IMG/VR virus record: IMGVR_UViG_3300037502_003770
Location: 248,001-312,000 of that record
DNA length: 64,000 bases
Strand: one strand, 5' to 3'
The notes beneath the pieces were generated by a model that saw only the letters and a list, made by a program, of their open reading frames with translations, was not told where the DNA came from and did no database searches. Position numbers and translations under genes: made by a program. Shown here in pieces: positions 29,574 through 53,004 of the stretch. Each line of letters begins with the position of its first letter. Within the stretch, counting starts at the first letter, position 1.

Positions 29574-31928
29574 ATGTCAACAAAGTATCTTAAACTTAAA
29601 GAAAACTATTTTTTAATCAAACAAGAAATAGAAAAAAAAGAAACGGTTTTAAAGAAACCAAATATTAACCATATTATTGTTATTGATTGCTCAGGTTCAA
29701 TGTATTACGAACTTGAGTCAATCAGAAAGCAATTAAAAAATAAATTACCTAACTTAGTAAATATAAACGATACTGTTAGTATAATTTATTTTTCAGGTAA
29801 AAACCAATATGGTATTTTAAAAGAATCTGTAGAGATTAAATCTCCTCAACAATTAACAGATTTAAATAAAGCAATTGATAAATGGTTAGTCCCTATGGGA
29901 TTAACAGGTTTTAAACAACCTTTAGAAGAAGTAAAATCTTTAATAGAAAGAATTAAATCTTCTAAAAATGATGGTTCTTTATTTAGTATGTTGTTTTTAA
30001 CTGATGGATATGATAATCAATGGTCTGAAAAAGAAATATTAAATGTTATTTCTGATTTAGATAGAGATTTATCAAACGCTACTTTTGTAGAATATGGTAA
30101 CTATTGTAATCATAATCTTTTAGTTAAAATGGCTGAAGGCTGTGGTGGTAAATTAATATATTCAGATAATTTTGATGAATATGATATTATTTTTGAGAAA
30201 GAAATTTCTTTAGAAAGTATCTACCCTAAAACATATGTTAAATTATCACATGTTTCTAATAGCGATATTTATTTCTCTTTTGATAATGTTACTAAAAATG
30301 TATTAACATTTACACCAAATCAAAATAATGAAATCGCTATTAATGATAATTTAGAATATATTTGTTATATTTCTAACACTAAACCTGAAAATTCTTCATT
30401 AATTGAAATAGGTGATACTAGAGATGATATAAATTATTCATTTTTATATCTTCTTTCAATGAAAATGAAGAGTAAAGAAATTTATTATCTTTTAGAAAAC
30501 GAACTTAACGATTCTTATTTGTATAATATATACAAAAATTGTATAGGTAAACAAAAGTATAATAGTTTTCAAAATGATATTTTATCATGTTTAAGTGATA
30601 AATCATTAAGATATAGAACTGGTAGAAATTTAGATTTATCAGAATCAAAAGTTTCAGTATTAGATTTAATTTCATTTTTATCTGAGTATCGAATAATTAC
30701 TCATAAAGATTATTTTAAATATAATAAAATTGGTAGAGCTAAAAAATCAGCTTCTTTAGTATTAAATCAAGATGATAAAAATCAAATTTTATCCTTACTT
30801 GAAGATAACTCTAATATAAGTTCTATTGAAAGTTTATTAGAAAGTATCAAAAGTAGTAAACCAAAAGATTTGACTTTTGAATATAAAGAATCTTTATATG
30901 AAAACAACTTTCCTTTTTTGAAAGATATTGTTTATAATACTGATAGAGCTAATTTATCGTTTAGAGTTAAATATGAAGGTCATGTAAATATTAAAGAAAC
31001 GTTGCAAAATACTGATGAGTTCATTAAACTTTCAGAAAATAATGTTCCTTTTGATTTCCCAACTTTTATATATAGAACTTTTACTATTATTAAAGATGGT
31101 ATTTTAAATATTAGTAAATTACCGATATTTGTACCTTCAGATATAGAAAGTGCTAATAAATTGTTTGATTATTTAAATGATAATAAAATTAAATATGAAT
31201 TAGAAGTATTTAATGATGATTTTTTAAATGAATCATGTGTTGTTTTAATAGATTTAAATTCTTTACCAATTATCAAACGTTCAGATATTGCTGATATTAA
31301 AGCAGTTAATACTTTCACTAATTTTGCTAAATTACAAGTATTAAAAGCTAAACAAAAGGTATATAAATACTTTGAAAATGAACACTTCCCTAAAGTAAGT
31401 AAAGGTTTTATTGAATTTTACGGTGAAGAATGTACTAATATTTTAAAGAATTTAGGTTTAACAGAAAGTAATGGTTTTGCACCTAAGACTGTTAATGATG
31501 AAGTTTCTGATGTGTATATTGCAACTGAAATTAAATTATCAGCTAAAGGGTTAAGTTCTTTCCCTAAAGTTACAGATGTTATAACTAAATTCCAATCTGG
31601 AAAGAAAATGACTATTTCTGAAAGTTTAATGTATCCTCCAATTAAAGAATATCAAGATTTAGTTAATAGTGAATATTATTTAAATTCTCCTGATAAAGAT
31701 AAGACTAATATTTTATCTAAATTCTTTAAAGAAAGAACAAAAGAAACTATTAATGAAACTAGATATGTTAACAGTTTAATTGCAAAGGATGTATTTTCTT
31801 TAGTATTATCTCAAACTTGGTTTGAAGAGTTTCAAGAAAATATTGATAATTCAAAAATGAGTATTACTTTAGATAATAATGTTTTTGAAATATCAGCTGC
31901 AATGAAAGAAGTTGAGGTTGCTATATAA
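29574..31928 (+). CDS. von Willebrand factor A domain protein
   Basis: MIDAS motif VIDCSGSM ... T ... FLTDG. Confidence 0.85.
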   Translation: MSTKYLKLKENYFLIKQEIEKKETVLKKPNINHIIVIDCSGSMYYELESIRKQLKNKLPNLVNINDTVSIIYFSGKNQYGILKESVEIKSPQQLTDLNKAIDKWLVPMGLTGFKQPLEEVKSLIERIKSSKNDGSLFSMLFLTDGYDNQWSEKEILNVISDLDRDLSNATFVEYGNYCNHNLLVKMAEGCGGKLIYSDNFDEYDIIFEKEISLESIYPKTYVKLSHVSNSDIYFSFDNVTKNVLTFTPNQNNEIAINDNLEYICYISNTKPENSSLIEIGDTRDDINYSFLYLLSMKMKSKEIYYLLENELNDSYLYNIYKNCIGKQKYNSFQNDILSCLSDKSLRYRTGRNLDLSESKVSVLDLISFLSEYRIITHKDYFKYNKIGRAKKSASLVLNQDDKNQILSLLEDNSNISSIESLLESIKSSKPKDLTFEYKESLYENNFPFLKDIVYNTDRANLSFRVKYEGHVNIKETLQNTDEFIKLSENNVPFDFPTFIYRTFTIIKDGILNISKLPIFVPSDIESANKLFDYLNDNKIKYELEVFNDDFLNESCVVLIDLNSLPIIKRSDIADIKAVNTFTNFAKLQVLKAKQKVYKYFENEHFPKVSKGFIEFYGEECTNILKNLGLTESNGFAPKTVNDEVSDVYIATEIKLSAKGLSSFPKVTDVITKFQSGKKMTISESLMYPPIKEYQDLVNSEYYLNSPDKDKTNILSKFFKERTKETINETRYVNSLIAKDVFSLVLSQTWFEEFQENIDNSKMSITLDNNVFEISAAMKEVEVAI

Positions 31929-47984: not shown

Positions 47985-49394
47985 ATGAATAAATATAAAA
48001 TTTTAGTATACAATCAAGATACTCATGGTGTTGGATTTTATCGGATGACACAACCAGCTTTACAATTAAATAAAGATTATTCAGATATTTTTGATATTGA
48101 AATAAATCCTTTAGCTGATGTTAATAATGATGATTATATTAAACAATTTTCTATGATATGGTGTCACAGAACAATAGTTGATTATAATAATATGGAATCA
48201 TATATGAAAAAAATGAGGTCTTTTGGAATAAAAGTTGTATTAGATATAGATGATTATTGGTCTGTACCTGAAACCCACTATTTATATCATGACCTTAAAG
48301 CTAGTGGGTTAGCTAAAATGATTATTAATAATATTAAATTAGTTGATGCTGTTACTACAACAAACCCATATTTTGCTTCTTTAATTAGACCTTTTAATAA
48401 AAATGTTTTTGTTATTGAAAATGGTATCGATACTTCATTAGACCAATACAATGAAGAAAAAAATAATTCTAAATTTACTAGAATTGGTTATTTAGGTGGT
48501 TCTTCTCACTATGAAGATTTATCTTTATTAAAAGATGGTTTTGAAATAATGTTAAATGATTCTTCAATTGAAAATAAATATCAATTTAATTTGGTTGGTT
48601 GGGATTTAAGAGGTACAATGACTGAAAATAAAGTTAACGATGAATTATATAGAGAATTTGTTGAAGAAATGCAAAATGTATATAAAATTCAATATACAAG
48701 AGAATTAGCTAATCTTTTAGCTAAAGCTGGACAAGATTTATCAAGAATTAATAATTTTCCACAACCTTTAGTTGAAAAATATAATAATAAACTAGTTACT
48801 AGAACTCAAAGAGCAATTAAACCTACTGAAAGTATTTGGTATAAATATGAAAAAGATATTTTTACTTCAAATTATAAATTAATTAAAGATAAAAATTATT
48901 ATGAATATTTAATGGAATTCAATCTAAATGATAGGTTTGGAAATGAATTAGAAGAACAACCATATGTAAGACATAAAACAGATGGTATTTATGAATTTGC
49001 TAAAAACTATAAACATATTGATGTTGCTTTAGCTCCTTTAAAAGTTACAGGTAAAGTAAAAAATGGTATTTTACTAATGAATGATAATAATAATTTTCAA
49101 TTATGTAAATCTAATTTAAAAATATTAGAATCAGCTTTTTATAAAACACCTATCATTTGTTCAGAAATATCTACTTATACTTATGATAAGGATTTTCAAC
49201 ATGGTAAAAATATTTTATTTGTATCACCTGAAAGACAAGAAAAAGATTGGTATAAGAATATTAAAAGATTAATTAATAATCCTAATGAAAGAATAGACAT
49301 GGGATTACTTGCTTATGAAACAGTAAAAGATAAGTATAATCTAAAAACATTAACTGAAAAAAGAAAAGATATTTATTTATCAATTCTAAAATAA
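47985..49394 (+). CDS. Glycosyltransferase, GT-B fold (GT4-like)
   Basis: GVGFYRM, LDIDDYW, RIGYLGGSSH, DVALAPL, KSNLKILE. The ATG at 47985 is preferred over the TTG inside the hairpin. Confidence 0.85.
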   Translation: MNKYKILVYNQDTHGVGFYRMTQPALQLNKDYSDIFDIEINPLADVNNDDYIKQFSMIWCHRTIVDYNNMESYMKKMRSFGIKVVLDIDDYWSVPETHYLYHDLKASGLAKMIINNIKLVDAVTTTNPYFASLIRPFNKNVFVIENGIDTSLDQYNEEKNNSKFTRIGYLGGSSHYEDLSLLKDGFEIMLNDSSIENKYQFNLVGWDLRGTMTENKVNDELYREFVEEMQNVYKIQYTRELANLLAKAGQDLSRINNFPQPLVEKYNNKLVTRTQRAIKPTESIWYKYEKDIFTSNYKLIKDKNYYEYLMEFNLNDRFGNELEEQPYVRHKTDGIYEFAKNYKHIDVALAPLKVTGKVKNGILLMNDNNNFQLCKSNLKILESAFYKTPIICSEISTYTYDKDFQHGKNILFVSPERQEKDWYKNIKRLINNPNERIDMGLLAYETVKDKYNLKTLTEKRKDIYLSILK

Positions 49395-49413
49395 TAAAAT
49401 ATATTAAATTAAT

Positions 49414-50262
49414 ATGGAAGAAAATAACAATATAGATAGTTTTTTTGATTTATTAAAAAATCTACCTGAAAATATTAAAAATAAACTAGCCTCCACAATA
49501 ATAAGTGGAGGTATAGCTTTAAGTAATGTTGAAAAGAATACTTTAAATGATTCTAATAAAACAGAAATTTCTCAAGCAATGGGTCTTGAACAAGGAAATT
49601 TTTTAGCTGATTTACTTGCAGGTAGAAAAACTAAAGCTTCTCAAGAATATGTTAAGAAATATTATGAAATTTTAAATAGAAGTGTTCTTTTAGAACAAAA
49701 ACATCGTGATATAGAATCTAAAAAAGATGGTTTATATAATAGAATGGCTAATGCTTTTCTTGATGAAGGAAATGTCAATCAATATCAAAAATATAATTTT
49801 AGACAAAACGCTTCTCATGAAGAAAATAAAGAACTTTTAAATGAACAATTTAATAGACAATTATCAAATAATCCAAATTATAAATTCTTATTTAATGTAC
49901 AACCTAAATTAGAAAGTTATTCACCTGATTATAGTAACCCTTCTTTAATAAGTCATAATTATAATGTTATTATAAATAATAATGCTGATATACAATATTT
50001 AAAATTCATCTATGCTTTGATTAATAGTATTTATGTATATGAAAATAAATCAAACAAAAATGATGTTTTAATTGAAATAAAACTTATTTCAGATAATGGA
50101 TTTAATACTTTTGTAAAAAATATTATGACAGTTACAAGTCTTGATATTTTAATTAAATCAATTGTTAATGAAGGCGATAAAGAATATTCTTTTAATATGT
50201 ACTCTCAAGAAAATATTCAATCTGAAAGAAAAATTATTTTAAAAGGTGATGTTATTTTTTAA
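49414..50262 (+). CDS. Hypothetical protein
   Basis: 282-aa ORF. Confidence 0.6.
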   Translation: MEENNNIDSFFDLLKNLPENIKNKLASTIISGGIALSNVEKNTLNDSNKTEISQAMGLEQGNFLADLLAGRKTKASQEYVKKYYEILNRSVLLEQKHRDIESKKDGLYNRMANAFLDEGNVNQYQKYNFRQNASHEENKELLNEQFNRQLSNNPNYKFLFNVQPKLESYSPDYSNPSLISHNYNVIINNNADIQYLKFIYALINSIYVYENKSNKNDVLIEIKLISDNGFNTFVKNIMTVTSLDILIKSIVNEGDKEYSFNMYSQENIQSERKIILKGDVIF

Positions 50263-50301
50263 CAAAATATATTTCTAAAAGTATTATCTATATCAAACAA
50301 G

Positions 50302-50373
50302 ACGATTGTAGTTCAGCAGGTAGAACGAAGGTCAGAAAACCTTGAGTCGACAGTTCAAGTCTGTCCTTTCGTT
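50302..50373 (+). ncRNA. Non-canonical tRNA-like RNA, apparently derived from tRNA-Phe(GAA)
   Basis: Intact D arm GTTC-AGCAGGTA-GAAC and T arm GACAG-TTCAAGT-CTGTC. Anticodon arm AAGGT-CAGAAA-ACCTT has a 6-nt loop with no U33. Two T-T mismatches in the acceptor stem; no CCA. Confidence 0.65.
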
Positions 50374-50392
50374 TGTTTGATATTTTAATTTT

Positions 50393-50465
50393 GGTGTTGT
50401 AGCTCAGTTGGTAGAGCGATTGACTGTTAATCAATTGGTCGTAGGTTCAATCCCTACCATCACCG
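50393..50465 (+). tRNA. tRNA-Asn(GTT)
   Basis: Cloverleaf with ATTGA-CTGTTAA-TCAAT anticodon arm and G73; CCA not encoded. Confidence 0.92.
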
Positions 50466-50496
50466 CTTTATTTTAAAAATATAATCTTTCTTTAAT

Positions 50497-51102
50497 ATGA
50501 ATTATTCTAAACATTTATTTATTTCTATTGGTACTGAAATTAACTTTGATTTTCATTCTATTTCTGATGAATATGAATTAAAATTAGTTAATGATTCTAA
50601 AAATAACAATGAATATGCTAGTTTAGTTTATTTAGGTGAATTTTCTGAATTAAAACAATTTACTTTAGGTTATGTAGATTCAACAACAAATGAATTTAAA
50701 AGTAGTACATTTAAAATAGATGATAAATATACAACAGAAAAAGAATTATTAACGATTTTAGTTAAATGTTTAAAACAATTTTATCAAAAATATCCTGTTT
50801 TAAACGGTTATATGTTATTTGATTATATAACTCCTTTTTTAATAAAAAGATTAATTGTTAATGGTTTTTTATTAAATGAATTACCAGCTCATTTAACAGA
50901 TTATACAAAAAAGCCTTGGGAAAAAATAAACTTTTGTTTATATGATTTCTGGAAGTTTGGTAGTTATAATAAATCTGCAACAATGTATATTCTATGTAAA
51001 CTATTTAATGTTGAATTTGATATACATAATATAAATAGTGAGACCTTTCTAAAAAGTTATTTTTCTTTAATTGAGAAAATCTTTAAGAAGAATACTATTT
51101 AA
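50497..51102 (+). CDS. PolB-type 3'-5' exonuclease-like protein, probably catalytically dead
   Basis: EKELL, PFLIKRLIVNG..LP, KPWE and DFWKFG resemble the stand-alone PolB-exo family, but ExoI reads SIGT rather than DIET. Confidence 0.55.
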   Translation: MNYSKHLFISIGTEINFDFHSISDEYELKLVNDSKNNNEYASLVYLGEFSELKQFTLGYVDSTTNEFKSSTFKIDDKYTTEKELLTILVKCLKQFYQKYPVLNGYMLFDYITPFLIKRLIVNGFLLNELPAHLTDYTKKPWEKINFCLYDFWKFGSYNKSATMYILCKLFNVEFDIHNINSETFLKSYFSLIEKIFKKNTI

Positions 51103-51117
51103 ATAAAATATAAACAA

Positions 51118-51191
51118 CGCAGGGTAGAGCAGTGGTCAGCTCGCAAGGCTCATAACCTTTGAGGTCGTTGGTTCGAATCCAATCCCTGCTA
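51118..51191 (+). tRNA. Initiator-type tRNA-Met(CAT)
   Basis: C1:T72 mismatch, A11-U24 pair (GAGC/GCTC), loop CTCATAA; one extra T at the 3' side of the anticodon stem. Confidence 0.85.
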
Positions 51192-51231
51192 CTAATTTAA
51201 ATTAATTTTACTATTTATATAATATATATTT

Positions 51232-52485
51232 ATGTACTCTATTAAAATAAGACTTTATTTAAATAAAAAACAACAAGAAAAATTAGAATCAATTTTTAAT
51301 TCTTGTCGTTTTATTTATAATAAATGTCTTTCTTATAAAATAGATACATATAATAATGAAAAAAGAATTTTAAGTGAATTTGATTTAGTAAATTATTATG
51401 GGCAAGTTTTAAGAAAAGACCCTAATTATAGTTTTTTATTAAATACAAATTCTAAACTACATAATTCTACAATTCTTCATGTTAATTCATCATTTGTCAA
51501 TTTTATTAAACATAATAAAGGTTTTCCTAAGTTTAAAAGTAAAAGAGAAAAAGAAAAAAGTTGTAAATTTCCTAATAAAGCTATTTCTGTTAACTTTTTA
51601 TCAGAAGGAAAGTATTTAAATTTTATAACTGATTTTAATAGAGTAAGGTTTAGAACTTCAAAAAAATATTTAGAAATATTAAAATCTATTAAAAGAGATG
51701 ATATACAAAACATAACTGTTACTAAGAAAAGAAGTGGTATTTATGAAGCTTCCATTTGTTTAAATAAATCAAAACCAAAGGGAAAAAAGTTAAAAGATAC
51801 CAATTCTATTATAGGAATAGATTTAGGTGTTAAACAACTATTAACCCTTTCTGATAATACCTCCTTTCAAAATAAAAAGTTTTATAAGAAAGAGGATATT
51901 AAATTAAAGAAATTACAAAGAAAGCTTTCTAAAAGTATAAAGTGTTTTAAAGAGAGTAAAAATGAAGATAGTAAGTATTTTGGAAAAAATAAAGGTAAAA
52001 ATTTAGAAAAGAACAGATTAAAAGTAGCAAGACTTAATGAAAAAATAACAAACCAAAAAGATACTTATATTCATGAAATAACTTCTAAAATTATAAACGA
52101 AAACCAAGTTATAATAATGGAAGATTTGAATGTACAAGGAATGTTAAAAAATCATAAACTTGCAAGGTCAATTCAAAATGTCTCTTTTTATGAAATAAAG
52201 AGGCAGTTAGAATATAAATCGTCTTTTTATGGAAGAGAATTAATCCTTGTAGATAGGTTTTTTCCATCAAGTAAGACTTGTTCTTGCTGCGGAAGTAAAA
52301 AGAAAGATTTAAAATTAAGTGACCGAGTATACAAATGTAATAACCCTTCATGCGGAGTAGAAATCGATAGAGATTTAAATGCAGCGATTAATATTCGCAA
52401 CGAAGGAATAAAAATAAAAAATAACCTTCACTTAAATGTGAAGGTTATTAAAAAGAAAAGTAGGGGTCCGTTGCTCCGAACATAA
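51232..52485 (+). CDS. tnpB: TnpB RNA-guided endonuclease (IS200/IS605/IS607 family), no adjacent transposase
   Basis: N-terminal HTH (KIRLY..CRFIYN), GFPKFKSK, RuvC D (GIDLG), E (MEDL), D (DRDLNAAINI), zinc ribbon CSCC...C...C. Confidence 0.93.
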   Translation: MYSIKIRLYLNKKQQEKLESIFNSCRFIYNKCLSYKIDTYNNEKRILSEFDLVNYYGQVLRKDPNYSFLLNTNSKLHNSTILHVNSSFVNFIKHNKGFPKFKSKREKEKSCKFPNKAISVNFLSEGKYLNFITDFNRVRFRTSKKYLEILKSIKRDDIQNITVTKKRSGIYEASICLNKSKPKGKKLKDTNSIIGIDLGVKQLLTLSDNTSFQNKKFYKKEDIKLKKLQRKLSKSIKCFKESKNEDSKYFGKNKGKNLEKNRLKVARLNEKITNQKDTYIHEITSKIINENQVIIMEDLNVQGMLKNHKLARSIQNVSFYEIKRQLEYKSSFYGRELILVDRFFPSSKTCSCCGSKKKDLKLSDRVYKCNNPSCGVEIDRDLNAAINIRNEGIKIKNNLHLNVKVIKKKSRGPLLRT

Positions 52486-52596
52486 CGCTTGCGGACTATC
52501 CACTATCGGGGTTATAATTGCAATATATTATAATTAGATATGATAGGTTGAAACAAGAAAAATATAAAACGATGTCTCTCAGGTAACATTTAATAT
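52420..52596 (+). ncRNA. Putative omega-RNA (reRNA) of TnpB; boundaries uncertain
   Basis: GC-richer structured tract overlapping the tnpB 3' end: 12-bp hairpin at 52420-52449, GTAGGG..CCGAA..ACGCTTGCGGACTATC pairing with GATAGGTTGAAACAAG, inner TTATAAT/ATTATAA stem. Confidence 0.6.
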
Positions 52597-52668
52597 GCTC
52601 GGTTGGTCTAACGGTCATGACGACTCACTTTCTATGAGTAAATAAGAGTTCGATTCTCTTATCGAGTA
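52597..52668 (+). tRNA. tRNA-Glu(TTC) with U37
   Basis: Acceptor GCTCGGT/ATCGAGT, anticodon arm ACTCA-CTTTCTA-TGAGT, T arm AAGAG-TTCGATT-CTCTT. Confidence 0.85.
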
Positions 52669-52679
52669 CAATAAAATAC

Positions 52680-52754
52680 GGAGTATTGGTATAATGGTTA
52701 TTACGCTTCACTGTCTATGAAGTAATACGAGTTCGATTCTCGTATACTCCGCCA
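52680..52754 (+). tRNA. tRNA-Asp(GTC) with U37
   Basis: Acceptor GGAGTAT/ATACTCC, anticodon arm CTTCA-CTGTCTA-TGAAG, G73, encoded CCA. Confidence 0.88.
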
Positions 52755-52773
52755 AATTAAATTAATATATAAT

Positions 52774-52989
52774 ATGACAACAGAACAAGGAAAATTTTTT
52801 ACAGTAAAAGTAAAATACGAAGAAACTACTGAAAAGGGTGGTACAAAATTAAAAACAGAATATAAAATTGTAAGAGCAGATTCTACAACAGAAGCTACCG
52901 AAAAGGTTTATAAATTATTCGATAACACAATGCTTATTTTTGAAGTTACTGATGTAAATTCAATGAAAGCTAATGAATATGTTAACTAA
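52774..52989 (+). CDS. DUF4494-like small protein
   Basis: FFTVKVKYE....G..K..TEYKIVRADSTTEATEKV resembles the N-domain of Bacteroidota DUF4494. Confidence 0.6.
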   Translation: MTTEQGKFFTVKVKYEETTEKGGTKLKTEYKIVRADSTTEATEKVYKLFDNTMLIFEVTDVNSMKANEYVN

Positions 52990-53004
52990 AAATAATTATT
53001 TTTT

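What the first reader, a model, noticed from the sequence alone, without database searches (positions are those of the whole stretch)
50291..50382. Clamped pseudo-tRNA-Phe: intact elbow, broken anticodon loop, acceptor extended by a 10-bp helix
Seen: perfect D and T arms, but a 6-nt anticodon loop (CAGAAA) with no U33, two T-T mismatches in the acceptor stem and no CCA. The flanks TATCAAACAA (50291-50300) and TTGTTTGATA (50373-50382) are exactly complementary and extend the acceptor helix. It is the first RNA after a TTAACA-N17-TATTAT promoter (50259-50287). Inference: random decay is unlikely to keep both elbow arms and add a clamp. This looks like a non-translating tRNA mimic, such as a decoy for host anticodon nucleases or tRNA sensors, a sponge for modification enzymes, or a processing signal.
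Basis: partly seen in the sequence, partly recalled or inferred. Interest (0 to 1): 0.6.

Follow-up and report, generated by a model that had tools for sequence, protein, structure and literature searches.

The report
Sealed non-decoding tRNA mimic in phage
A 313-kb phage from groundwater and aquatic metagenomes starts its tRNA gene cluster with a tRNA-Phe-derived gene whose anticodon loop is one base short and whose two ends are zipped together by a flanking helix; related phages keep this shape through compensating mutations, so it is probably a working tRNA look-alike and not a dead gene, but its job is still unknown.

Summary
Window 50302-50372 is a 71-nt tRNA-like gene (Rfam tRNA 44.9 bits) with an intact D/T elbow. 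It has a 6-nt anticodon loop (CAGAAA, no U33) and two U·U pairs in the acceptor stem. The flanking helix is 11 bp, not 10 (50290-50300 with 50373-50383), with G50301 bulged. Such a helix occurs about 1 in 10,000 times by chance in this 22%-GC genome, and 16 control tRNAs have 5 bp or less.

The window is part of a 312.7-kb jumbo phage record. Contigs of related phages from several assemblies give four versions in two diverged alleles. All keep a 71-72-nt body, a 6-nt U33-less loop (CAGAAA or CGAAAA, the latter being CUGAAAA minus U33) and the same clamp layout (-1 bulged, -2 paired to 73). The alleles differ by six two-sided compensatory changes (0 of 500 shuffles), and the G·U pairs point to RNA on the + strand. 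One lineage lost every genuine tRNA of the cluster but kept this element. No relative has a normal tRNA-Phe.

So it is a selected, non-decoding, end-sealed tRNA-Phe derivative. Whether it acts as a trans decoy or a cis processing/stability module is open. There are no expression data and the host is unknown.

The parts
50256..50287 (+). Promoter-like element TTTTTAACAAAAT...AAGTATTAT (-35 TTAACA at 50259-50264, 17-nt spacer, -10 TATTAT at 50282-50287).
   Evidence: It is the top sigma-70-type match, 10/12. It is almost invariant in all relatives (1-2 changes in 29 nt). The extended 32-mer recurs in the genome (47 copies with 9 or fewer mismatches, about 25 in shuffles), and one copy lies 15 nt upstream of the isolated tRNA-Met at genome 77672. 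Function was not tested.
50290..50300 (+). 5' arm of the leader-trailer helix ('clamp'), ATATCAAACAA.
   Evidence: It is exactly complementary to 50373-50383 and pairs in the MFE fold. The A/C-rich leader resembles the leaders behind other copies of the same promoter.
50301..50301 (+). Bulged nucleotide at position -1 (G), between the clamp and the acceptor stem. This is the canonical RNase P cleavage position.
   Evidence: The second allele has a bulged A at the same place.
50302..50372 (+). 71-nt tRNA-Phe-derived body. Acceptor 50302-08 / 50366-72 (U·U at 5-68 and 6-67); D arm 50311-26; anticodon arm 50328-43 with the 6-nt loop CAGAAA (50333-38); variable loop 50344-48; T arm 50349-65.
   Evidence: Rfam tRNA scores 44.9 bits. 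ARAGORN calls it tRNA-?(Ser|Phe). All tertiary-core nucleotides are present (U8, A14, G15-C48, G18, G19, T54, T55, C56, A58, C13-G22-G46), read directly. Covariation is shown.
50373..50383 (+). 3' arm of the clamp, TTGTTTGATAT. It starts at the discriminator position 73.
   Evidence: It co-varies with the 5' arm in the second allele.
50384..50392 (+). U-rich 9-nt spacer (TTTAATTTT) leading into tRNA-Asn. In the relatives L006 and the L007 type, an extra hairpin sits at this place.
   Evidence: The L007-type hairpin GGGGATGTAA-N6-TTACATCCCC followed by GAATTTTT is scored as terminator-like.
50393..50466 (+). tRNA-Asn(GTT), the next gene in the same presumed transcript. It is context, not part of the element.
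   Evidence: Rfam scores it 73.5 bits and ARAGORN calls it. There is no room for a promoter of its own.

Best explanation
The element is a maintained, non-decoding derivative of tRNA-Phe(GAA). It is transcribed from a conserved phage promoter as the first RNA of the tRNA cluster.

Shown:
- It keeps the full L-shape core: D/T elbow, acceptor/T stack, and a sequence-frozen D arm and anticodon stem.
- Its anticodon loop has 6 nt and no U33 in every version.
- Its 5' leader and 3' trailer form a 7-11-bp helix that continues the acceptor stem, with one bulged nucleotide at -1 and the discriminator paired.
- Acceptor stem, T stem and clamp co-vary between alleles.

Inferred:
- Without U33 and with a short loop it cannot form a normal anticodon U-turn, so it does not decode.
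- The sealed, variable acceptor end (discriminator U or G, not the A73 of tRNA-Phe) keeps it from being charged and from entering translation. It also shields both ends from exonucleases.
- It therefore works as a tRNA look-alike that occupies a tRNA-recognising factor in the infected cell. The most likely target is a host factor that reads the D/anticodon half of tRNA-Phe or the tRNA elbow, such as a tRNA-directed nuclease or sensor, or a processing or modification enzyme. In other words, it is a trans-acting decoy or competitor.

My odds:
- About 0.8 that it is a selected, non-decoding structured RNA.
- About 0.4 that it acts in trans as a mimic or decoy.
- About 0.3 that it instead acts in cis on its own transcript.
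For: Real and non-random:
- The clamp is 11 bp, P about 9e-5 per interval. Other tRNAs have 4 bp or less and outside controls 5 bp or less.

Conserved:
- There are four versions from two alleles. The upstream protein is only 53% identical between them.
- All have a 71-72-nt body, a 6-nt loop CAGAAA or CGAAAA, and the same clamp layout.

Covariation:
- 91% of cells are paired, and 6 pairs change on both sides against 1.8 ± 1.0 in shuffles (0/500). Slid registers give 32-48% paired and 0-1 double changes.
- The double changes are at acceptor 3-70 and 4-69, at T 51-63 and 52-62, and at two or more clamp pairs.
- Four G·U pairs in the second allele indicate RNA on the + strand.

Selection pattern:
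- 13 of 24 acceptor and T stem positions differ, against 0 of 40 in the D arm, anticodon stem, variable loop and T loop (Fisher 2e-7). No donor tRNA for a gene conversion was found.

Retention:
- The L010 lineage has tRNA-Asn internally deleted and Met, Tyr, Glu and Asp gone, yet the element is intact.
- No relative has a normal tRNA-Phe.

Origin:
- Infernal aligns CGAAAA as CUGAAAA with U33 deleted.

Thermodynamics:
- The clamp forms in the MFE of all four versions. The cloverleaf plus clamp lies within about 1 kcal/mol of the MFE in three of them.

Promoter and terminator:
- The promoter is conserved and belongs to a recurring class.
- The second allele has a terminator-like hairpin right after the clamp, as expected for a small RNA gene.

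Literature:
- The one review I read describes only 7-nt loops plus an enlarged 8-nt exception for active natural tRNAs (PMC7609411).
Against: - There is no expression evidence at all; no RNA run holds the phage.
- There are only two alleles, so all six compensatory changes lie on one branch, which gives weak phylogenetic replication.
- The L006 version weakens the design. It has a 1-nt deletion in the 3' arm and an A·A at 1-72, its clamp is reduced to 6+2 bp, and its cloverleaf is 6.6 kcal/mol worse than the MFE.
- The window allele carries two U·U pairs, and the 26 junction is 1 or 2 nt long. This looseness fits relaxed constraint.
- A transcription start about 7 nt after the -10 would remove part of the 5' arm.
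- No partner was found. The phage has no Ro60/TROVE, no CCA-adding enzyme and no RtcB.
- The host is unknown, so no target can be named.
- The element is always first in a polycistronic tRNA/ORF unit, which fits a cis role equally well.
Confidence: 0.45

Rival explanations
1. It is a cis-acting processing or stability module. The tRNA-shaped, end-paired structure at the 5' end of the operon transcript could act in either of two ways. It could be a landing site for RNase P, RNase Z or RNase III that punctuates the transcript, for example by cutting read-through mRNA from the upstream gene away from the tRNAs. Or it could be a 5' structural cap that hides the transcript's 5' end from 5'-end-dependent decay. 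In either case it has no role of its own after cleavage.
For: - It is always the first element after the promoter, with tRNA-Asn following after only 9-41 nt and no room for a second promoter.
- The likely start coincides with the 5' arm, so the primary 5' end would be base-paired (inference).
- The bulge sits exactly at the RNase P site in both alleles.
- The upstream ORF ends at 50262 and no terminator-like site lies between it and the element, so read-through is plausible.
- The element is retained in the L010 lineage, where only ORFs remain downstream.
- Leader-trailer stems are the classic processing device of rRNA precursors (established knowledge).
Against: - A processing or capping signal needs only the acceptor/T minihelix or a plain hairpin. 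Here the D arm and anticodon stem are sequence-frozen (0 of 40 changes), and the 6-nt loop length is kept.
- Genuine tRNAs such as Asn right next door would serve equally well as punctuation.
- The isolated tRNA-Met behind the same promoter class has no clamp.
- From general knowledge, not tested here: a paired leader-trailer is expected to hinder RNase P and RNase Z, not help them.
Confidence: 0.3
2. It is a decaying tRNA-Phe pseudogene. The gene lost function by an anticodon-loop deletion and is drifting. The clamp and the apparent covariation would be leftovers from the time it was functional, or a by-product of the promoter-proximal leader sequence.
For: - The non-canonical loop, the two U·U pairs, the A·A at 1-72 with a weakened clamp in L006, and the 1-2-nt junction variation.
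- The low Rfam score relative to its neighbours.
- tRNA clusters in these phages do lose and break genes: the L010 Asn deletion, and Tyr/Pro absent from the window.
- There are only two alleles.
Against: - Both alleles share the 6-nt U33-less loop and the clamp, so these features predate the split. The six compensatory double changes and the G·U-only single changes arose afterwards.
- No pair is lost in the second allele. It actually repairs both U·U pairs.
- The element outlives all true tRNAs in one lineage.
- The promoter is almost invariant.
- An 11-bp perfect flank helix is not a feature of any functional tRNA examined.
Confidence: 0.12
3. It is a DNA-level element. The inverted repeats would be terminal repeats or a cruciform/hairpin site for recombination, transposition (an IS605/TnpB element lies 0.85 kb away) or replication, and the tRNA-like sequence between them would be incidental.
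For: - A perfect 11-bp inverted repeat flanks a 73-bp unit.
- A TnpB gene is nearby and moves between sites in relatives.
- A neighbouring hairpin loop is inverted between L007 and L017, showing DNA-level flipping at inverted repeats in this region.
Against: - The second allele tolerates G·T but never A·C in the stems. That is an RNA signature specific to the + strand.
- Covariation also affects the internal T and acceptor stems.
- No target-site duplication is visible in the flanks.
- The element is at one fixed place in all relatives, whereas TnpB is elsewhere or absent.
- No other copy exists in the 313-kb genome.
Confidence: 0.05
4. It is still a decoder with unusual properties, for example a frameshift-promoting or doublet-reading tRNA, or one rescued by modification. 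After removal of the flanks and CCA addition it would be charged and used on the ribosome.
For: - The L-shape core is intact.
- GAA is present in the loop of both alleles.
- Four of the five genuine tRNAs also lack an encoded CCA, so CCA addition must occur in this host (my reading of the 3' flanks).
Against: - There is no U33 and the loop has 6 nt in all versions.
- The discriminator is U or G and always paired, not the A73 universal in tRNA-Phe (established knowledge of PheRS identity).
- The register of GAA within the loop differs between alleles (C-A-GAA-A versus C-GAA-AA).
- The one review I read describes no active natural tRNA with a 6-nt loop.
Confidence: 0.03

Closest known systems
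Ordinary phage-encoded tRNAs, including variants with anticodon-loop changes that evade host anticodon nucleases (van den Berg et al. 2023, eLife, PMC10264068, title and abstract only; PARIS and retron escape tRNAs, PMC11464382 and PMC11555353, listed)
   Same: It lies in a phage tRNA cluster. It has the tRNA fold with all tertiary-core nucleotides and passes the Rfam tRNA threshold. Its anticodon loop is altered relative to the canonical one.
   Different: Those tRNAs stay decoders, with 7-nt loops and free acceptor ends. This one has a 6-nt loop without U33 and a variable, paired discriminator, and its acceptor end is sealed by a 7-11-bp leader-trailer helix. Sixteen genuine tRNAs checked here have 5 bp or less.
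Bacterial Y RNAs that mimic tRNA: YrlA and D. radiodurans Yrn1 (Chen et al. 2014, RNA 20:1715, PMC4201824)
   Same: They are non-coding tRNA mimics with D and T arms whose 5' and 3' ends pair into a long stem, and they are also found in phages. As modelled in the paper, Yrn1 has a 5-bp 'anticodon' stem with a 6-nt loop.
   Different: There is no Ro60/TROVE gene in the phage and no match to any Rfam family other than tRNA. No GNCGAAN0-1G motif is in the sequence (read). In YrlA the terminal stem replaces the anticodon arm and the 'acceptor' is a closed hairpin. Here the terminal stem extends a true acceptor stem.
Bacillus cereus tRNA-Other, a pseudo-tRNA that works outside translation (Rogers et al. 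2012, PMC3399842; Ataide et al. 2005 and 2009, as cited there)
   Same: It is a tRNA-derived RNA that is poorly chargeable and not on polysomes, and it acts by being recognised as a tRNA (T-box regulation of trpS1). This is a precedent for a regulatory, non-translating pseudo-tRNA.
   Different: It is chromosomal, not phage-encoded. It is described as having a Trp anticodon. That paper's text never mentions the acceptor, so it describes no leader-trailer clamp. No sequence relationship was examined.
Leader-trailer processing stems of rRNA and some tRNA precursors (RNase III stems; from general knowledge, not tested here)
   Same: Sequences flanking a stable RNA pair to form a helix that encloses the mature domain.
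   Different: Those stems are longer, are removed during maturation and enclose functional RNAs. Here the enclosed RNA is itself non-canonical, and the helix directly stacks on the acceptor stem with a single-nucleotide bulge.
Phage T4 stable RNAs 'species 1 and 2' (rnaC, rnaD) in the T4 tRNA cluster (from memory, not checked here)
   Same: They are small stable RNAs of unknown function, co-transcribed and co-processed with phage tRNAs.
   Different: No sequence or structure relation was examined. They are larger and not simple cloverleaves.

Membership tests
tRNA (Rfam RF00005), structural family | Covariance-model score at or above the gathering threshold (29 bits). | tested here: met
   44.9 bits in the window and 45.5 bits in the second allele. 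Neighbouring genuine tRNAs score 55-73 bits.
tRNA (functional decoder) | 7-nt anticodon loop with U33 preceding the anticodon. | tested here: not met
   The loop is CAGAAA or CGAAAA, 6 nt with no U, in all four versions.
tRNA (functional decoder) | L-shape tertiary core: U8-A14, R15-Y48, G18/G19 with T55/C56, T54-A58, 13-22-46. | tested here: met
   All are present in the window sequence and unchanged in relatives. The D arm, variable loop and T loop show 0-4 differences, none at these positions.
tRNA (functional decoder) | Free single-stranded 3' end (discriminator plus CCA) that can be aminoacylated. | not testable with these tools
   No CCA is encoded, and the discriminator and trailer are paired to the leader. 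Processing, CCA addition and charging need experiments.
tRNA-Phe | Anticodon GAA at positions 34-36. | tested here: inconclusive
   GAA is in the loop of both alleles but in different registers (C-A-GAA-A and C-GAA-AA). Infernal aligns the second as CUGAAAA minus U33. This supports the origin, not the function.
tRNA-Phe | Discriminator A73 (PheRS identity element; established knowledge). | tested here: not met
   Position 73 is U in the window allele and G in the second allele, and it is always paired to -2.
YrlA / Y RNA | Encoded next to, and bound by, a Ro60/Rsr (TROVE) protein. | tested here: not met
   PF05731 has no match in the 313-kb phage record, while the control genomes respond. A host Ro60 cannot be excluded.
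YrlA / Y RNA | Sequence/structure match to the family model and the conserved GNCGAAN0-1G motif (PMC4201824). | tested here: not met
   A permissive Rfam scan (E up to 10) returns tRNA as the only credible hit. No GNCGAA is in 50288-50385.
Intrinsic terminator | G+C-rich hairpin immediately followed by a U tract. | tested here: not met
   In the window only the T arm is flagged, which is an artefact. The clamp is A/U-rich. A terminator-like hairpin exists only in the second allele, downstream of the clamp.
Transposable element with terminal inverted repeats (MITE-like) | Multiple copies and target-site duplication. | tested here: not met
   There is a single copy in the genome, at the same site in all relatives, and no direct repeat outside the arms.

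The most novel reading that the evidence does not exclude
A phage-encoded RNA anti-defence of a new type. It would be a tRNA-Phe look-alike made unusable for translation on purpose (U33 deleted, acceptor end sealed by a leader-trailer helix). It would titrate or jam a host tRNA-directed immune nuclease or tRNA sensor. The fast, structure-preserving turnover of its acceptor stem, T stem and clamp, set against a frozen D/anticodon half, would be the trace of an arms race.
Probability: 0.2. Interest if true: 0.85.

Novelty: new variant of a known kind. Interest (0 to 1): 0.62.

Why it matters
Phage genomes are full of 'undetermined' or 'pseudo' tRNA calls that annotation pipelines discard. This one shows comparative evidence of selection for a tRNA shape that cannot decode and whose ends are locked together.

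If it is a trans-acting mimic, it would add an RNA decoy to the fast-growing list of conflicts between phages and tRNA-targeting bacterial defences. Known phage answers there are replacement tRNAs that still decode.

If it is a cis module, it would be a new way of organising tRNA-operon processing or stability in phages.

Either way it gives a concrete criterion for re-examining discarded pseudo-tRNAs in viral genomes: a leader-trailer helix, a U33-less short loop and covarying stems. It also gives a small, easily synthesised RNA for biochemical tests.

Tried and rejected
1. Near kin by DNA. Three patterns in viral contigs, one in metagenome contigs and one in bacterial genomes gave no kin. 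The single bacterial hit, L019, is an unrelated truncated tRNA-Trp fragment.
2. Kin through single flank proteins or phrog_2426 in IMG/VR: none. The relatives came instead from the protein word search plus contig look-ups. A third search, with the 324-aa neighbour, found only the same two clades.
3. L015 has the ORF in another context without the element. P0007's contig had no DNA available.
4. The nearest cultured phages (Ackermannviridae-like) share only about 30% protein identity. The 'tRNA-OTHER' beside tRNA-Asn in Salmonella phage bering is a 144-nt annotation with no tRNA signal, so it is not an analogue.
5. Y RNA/YrlA idea. It was prompted by the annotation of the Ackermannviridae homologues of the phrog_2426 protein as vWA proteins. 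In the window's own protein the VWA_3 match is below Pfam's cut-off (21 bits against 27). I rejected the idea because there is no TROVE, no Rfam match and no motif.
6. Phage-encoded partners. There is no CCA-adding enzyme and no RtcB. The Rnl1 search was uninformative because its control rang nowhere. An OB-fold Rnl-type ligase exists far away, with no evident link.
7. The frozen-core pattern found only ordinary tRNAs of other identities. I used them as clamp controls.
8. The MAFFT alignment A1 mis-registers the diverged acceptor stem. I replaced it with position-based tables and a model-based alignment.
9. PMC8915964 was read for leader-trailer effects on RNase P, but it does not address such duplexes.
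10. No RNA-seq run holds the phage, so expression could not be tested.
Full report
**What is there**

The window is bases 248001-312000 of a 312,694-bp IMG/VR virus record (22% GC, CheckV 96% complete). Genes are tightly packed on the + strand. The nearest cultured phages (Ackermannviridae-like) share only about 30% identity in a marker protein.

The genome has six tRNA-model hits. One is an isolated tRNA-Met. The other five form a cluster in the window: the element, then Asn, Met, Glu and Asp, with a TnpB gene inserted in the cluster.

It has perfect D and T arms with all tertiary-core nucleotides, a 5-bp anticodon stem closing a 6-nt loop CAGAAA without U33, and two U·U pairs in the acceptor stem. 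Rfam's tRNA model gives 44.9 bits, above threshold but below the 55-73 bits of its neighbours. No other Rfam family matches credibly, even at E up to 10.

**The clamp**

The flanks pair over 11 bp, not 10 (50290-50300 with 50373-50383). G50301 at position -1 is bulged and the discriminator is paired.

In this genome a perfect flank helix of 11 bp or more occurs at 9e-5 of random 70-76-nt intervals. The five genuine tRNAs have 4 bp or less, and 11 distinct tRNAs from unrelated phages have 5 bp or less.

The helix forms in the minimum-free-energy fold (z = -3.7). The cloverleaf plus clamp lies within about 1 kcal/mol of the MFE.

**Promoter**

TTAACA-N17-TATTAT (50259-50287) is the best sigma-70-like site of the region. 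Such matches are not enriched in this AT-rich DNA (27 found, 26.5 expected).

Better evidence comes from three facts:
- The 29-nt site is nearly invariant in all relatives.
- The extended motif recurs in the genome above shuffled expectation (47 against about 25 copies).
- The isolated tRNA-Met at genome 77672 lies behind the same motif at the same distance, with a similar A/C-rich leader but no complementary trailer.

So the leader is a shared promoter-proximal feature, and what is special here is the matching 3' arm. A start about 7 nt after the -10 would lie inside the 5' arm, leaving about 6-9 bp of clamp in the RNA and placing the 5' end in the helix. This is inference.

**Relatives**

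DNA-pattern scans and single-protein locus searches found nothing.

Laying the contigs of four public runs on 48000-53000 showed three things:
- an identical source contig;
- an independent aquatic run with a 98.5% relative;
- a contig in which exactly 50288-50388 is replaced by 122 other letters.

Homologues of the flanking ORFs and look-ups of their contigs then gave 11 loci. They hold four distinct versions of the element in two alleles. The upstream protein is only 53% identical between the alleles.

**Comparison of the versions**

- All bodies are 71-72 nt.
- All have a 6-nt loop without U. It is CAGAAA in the window, L016 and L006. It is CGAAAA in the L007 type, which Infernal aligns as the tRNA-Phe loop CUGAAAA with U33 deleted.
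- The D stem and anticodon stem are invariant.
- In the acceptor stem, 3-70 changes G-C to U-A and 4-69 changes A-U to U-A. Both U·U pairs become A-U and G·U. Pairs 1-72 and 7-66 become G·U.
- In the T stem, 51-63 changes C-G to A-U, 52-62 changes A-U to U-A, and 50-64 becomes G·U.
- The clamp keeps its layout: -1 is bulged and pairing begins at -2:73. It is 11 bp in the window allele and 7 bp (plus G·U extensions) in the second allele, with different sequences in both arms.
- L006 is a weakened variant. One T is deleted in the 3' arm and there is an A·A at 1-72, leaving 6+2 bp.

**Formal test**

I built a covariance model with the cloverleaf plus clamp and realigned the four versions. This conservative alignment follows sequence homology in the clamp. 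On it:
- 91% of cells pair (shuffles 85 ± 1.6%, 0 of 500 reach the observed value);
- six pairs change on both sides (shuffles 1.8 ± 1.0, 0 of 500);
- sliding the partners by 1-3 columns gives 32-48% paired and 0-1 double changes.

Single-sided changes give G·U and never A·C, which indicates RNA on the + strand.

Differences between the alleles are concentrated. 13 of 24 acceptor and T stem positions differ, against 0 of 40 in the D arm, anticodon stem, variable loop, T loop and positions 8-9 (Fisher 2e-7). No other tRNA in the held sequences could have donated the second allele's stems.

The caveat is that there are only two alleles, so these are events on a single branch.

**Retention**

The clusters are fluid:
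- L006 and L013 also carry Tyr and Pro.
- The window has lost Tyr and Pro where TnpB sits.
- In the L010 lineage tRNA-Asn has an internal 27-nt deletion and Met, Tyr, Glu and Asp are absent, yet the element and its promoter are untouched.

No relative has a canonical tRNA-Phe.

**Interpretation**

Relatives do not carry a normal tRNA-Phe, the clamp is conserved as a structure, and the odd bases are reproduced in independent assemblies. Expression remains untested because no RNA run holds the phage.

The data show a tRNA-Phe derivative that lost U33 before the alleles split. Since then it has been kept in tRNA shape, with its ends sealed. I infer the following:
- It does not decode. It has no U-turn nucleotide and a short loop, and the one review I read describes only 7-nt loops plus an 8-nt exception (PMC7609411).
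- It is not charged as tRNA-Phe. The discriminator is U or G and is paired.

The frozen D/anticodon half argues for a reader that sees more than the acceptor/T minihelix. This favours a trans-acting mimic or decoy (about 0.4) over a pure cis processing or stability module (about 0.3). Against that, the fixed position at the head of the operon, the bulge at the RNase P site and the base-paired 5' end fit the cis model well. A decaying pseudogene (about 0.12), a DNA-level element (about 0.05) and a residual decoder (about 0.03) are less likely, for the reasons given under the rival explanations.

**Partners sought**

The phage has no Ro60/TROVE, no CCA-adding enzyme and no RtcB. The Rnl1 search was uninformative because its control did not respond. 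An OB-fold Rnl-type RNA ligase lies about 200 kb away.

The well-conserved 201-aa ORF inside the cluster looks like a PolB-exo/DEDD 3'-5' exonuclease fold by Atlas features (0.94) and structure (TM 0.82). It has no Pfam hit. It keeps an Exo II-like motif, but the Exo I and Exo III acidic residues are not evident. A link to the element is only a lead.

**Comparison with known systems**

- It passes the structural test for tRNA but fails the decoder tests (loop length, U33, A73).
- It resembles bacterial Y RNAs (YrlA, Yrn1) in being a tRNA mimic with paired termini, and Yrn1 is even modelled with a 6-nt 'anticodon' loop (PMC4201824). It fails every membership feature tested: no Ro60, no model match, no motif, and a different topology.
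- B. cereus tRNA-Other (PMC3399842) is a functional precedent for a non-translating pseudo-tRNA.
- Phage tRNAs that evade anticodon nucleases (PMC10264068) remain decoders.

I therefore rate it a new variant of a known kind (tRNA-derived mimics), of moderate to high interest. It becomes much more interesting if the decoy reading is confirmed.

**Limits**

There are only two alleles, no expression data, an unknown host, and rough E-values for the custom model. The statements on RNase P/Z behaviour with paired flanks and on PheRS identity rest on general knowledge, not on tests here.

Noticed in passing
window 51232-52485 (+), with flanks 51196-52592: A TnpB/IS605 OrfB gene (Pfam OrfB_IS605, Cas12f1-like TNB and HTH domains) sits between tRNA-Met and tRNA-Glu. 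In relatives this 1.4-kb segment is absent, and about 380 nt holding tRNA-Tyr, a 59-aa ORF and sometimes tRNA-Pro lie there instead. Those relatives carry a TnpB copy at a different site (L006:769-2010, L013:809-2050). This looks like an insertion polymorphism that cost the window phage two tRNAs.
   Followed up: partly
window 50497-51102 (+): The 201-aa ORF embedded in the tRNA cluster is 90-99% identical across alleles, while its upstream neighbour is only 53% identical. It resembles stand-alone PolB-exo/DEDD 3'-5' exonucleases by ESM Atlas features (0.94) and structure (TM 0.82). Pfam gives no hit even at E = 10. An Exo II-like motif NGYMLFDYITPFL is kept, but the Exo I and Exo III acidic residues are not evident. 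It may be an RNA-end enzyme or an inactive binder.
   Followed up: partly
L007:1520-1545 versus L017 (same place); absent in window 50384-50392: Between the clamp and tRNA-Asn the second allele has a 10-bp hairpin, GGGGATGTAA-N6-TTACATCCCC followed by GAATTTTT, scored as terminator-like. Its 6-nt loop is inverted between L007 (TCATAT) and L017 (ATATGA), a DNA flip across the inverted repeat. L006 has an A/T-rich hairpin at that place, and the window and L016 have none.
   Followed up: partly
L010:5895-5945 (also L011, L012): In this lineage tRNA-Asn has lost its anticodon arm through a 27-nt deletion between TGGT microhomologies, and the other tRNAs of the cluster are gone. The 204-aa ORF is followed directly by the DUF4494 gene.
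   Followed up: partly
genome (outside the window) 77625-77656, 98042-98073, 97012, 118209 and 119365, 139480; window 50256-50287: A recurring promoter-like class, (T)TTTAACAAAA...(A)GTAtTAT, lies mostly on the + strand ahead of genes. Copies at 118209 and 119365 have identical 80-nt surroundings, so a repeat spaced about 1.16 kb apart lies there.
   Followed up: no
genome 95891-96943 (+), outside the window (L020:1033-2085): This is an RNA ligase of the OB-fold type (Pfam RNA_ligase PF09414 at 53 bits, plus the PHA02142 OB-fold domain). The phage therefore has RNA nick-sealing capacity, which hints at RNA repair. No kinase/phosphatase partner was seen in the two neighbouring ORFs.
   Followed up: partly
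window 29574-31928 (+): A 784-aa protein of phrog_2426 (480 bits) has a weak vWA domain, below Pfam's cut-off. Its homologues in Ackermannviridae and other large myoviruses (about 30% identity) are the closest link to cultured phages.
   Followed up: partly
L006, L017 versus L007, window: tRNA-Asn (window 50393-50466): tRNA-Asn exists in at least three strongly different, fully compensated versions that do not follow the alleles of the neighbouring element. L017 combines the L007-type element with an L006-like Asn. The cluster is therefore a recombination mosaic at the scale of about 100 nt.
   Followed up: no
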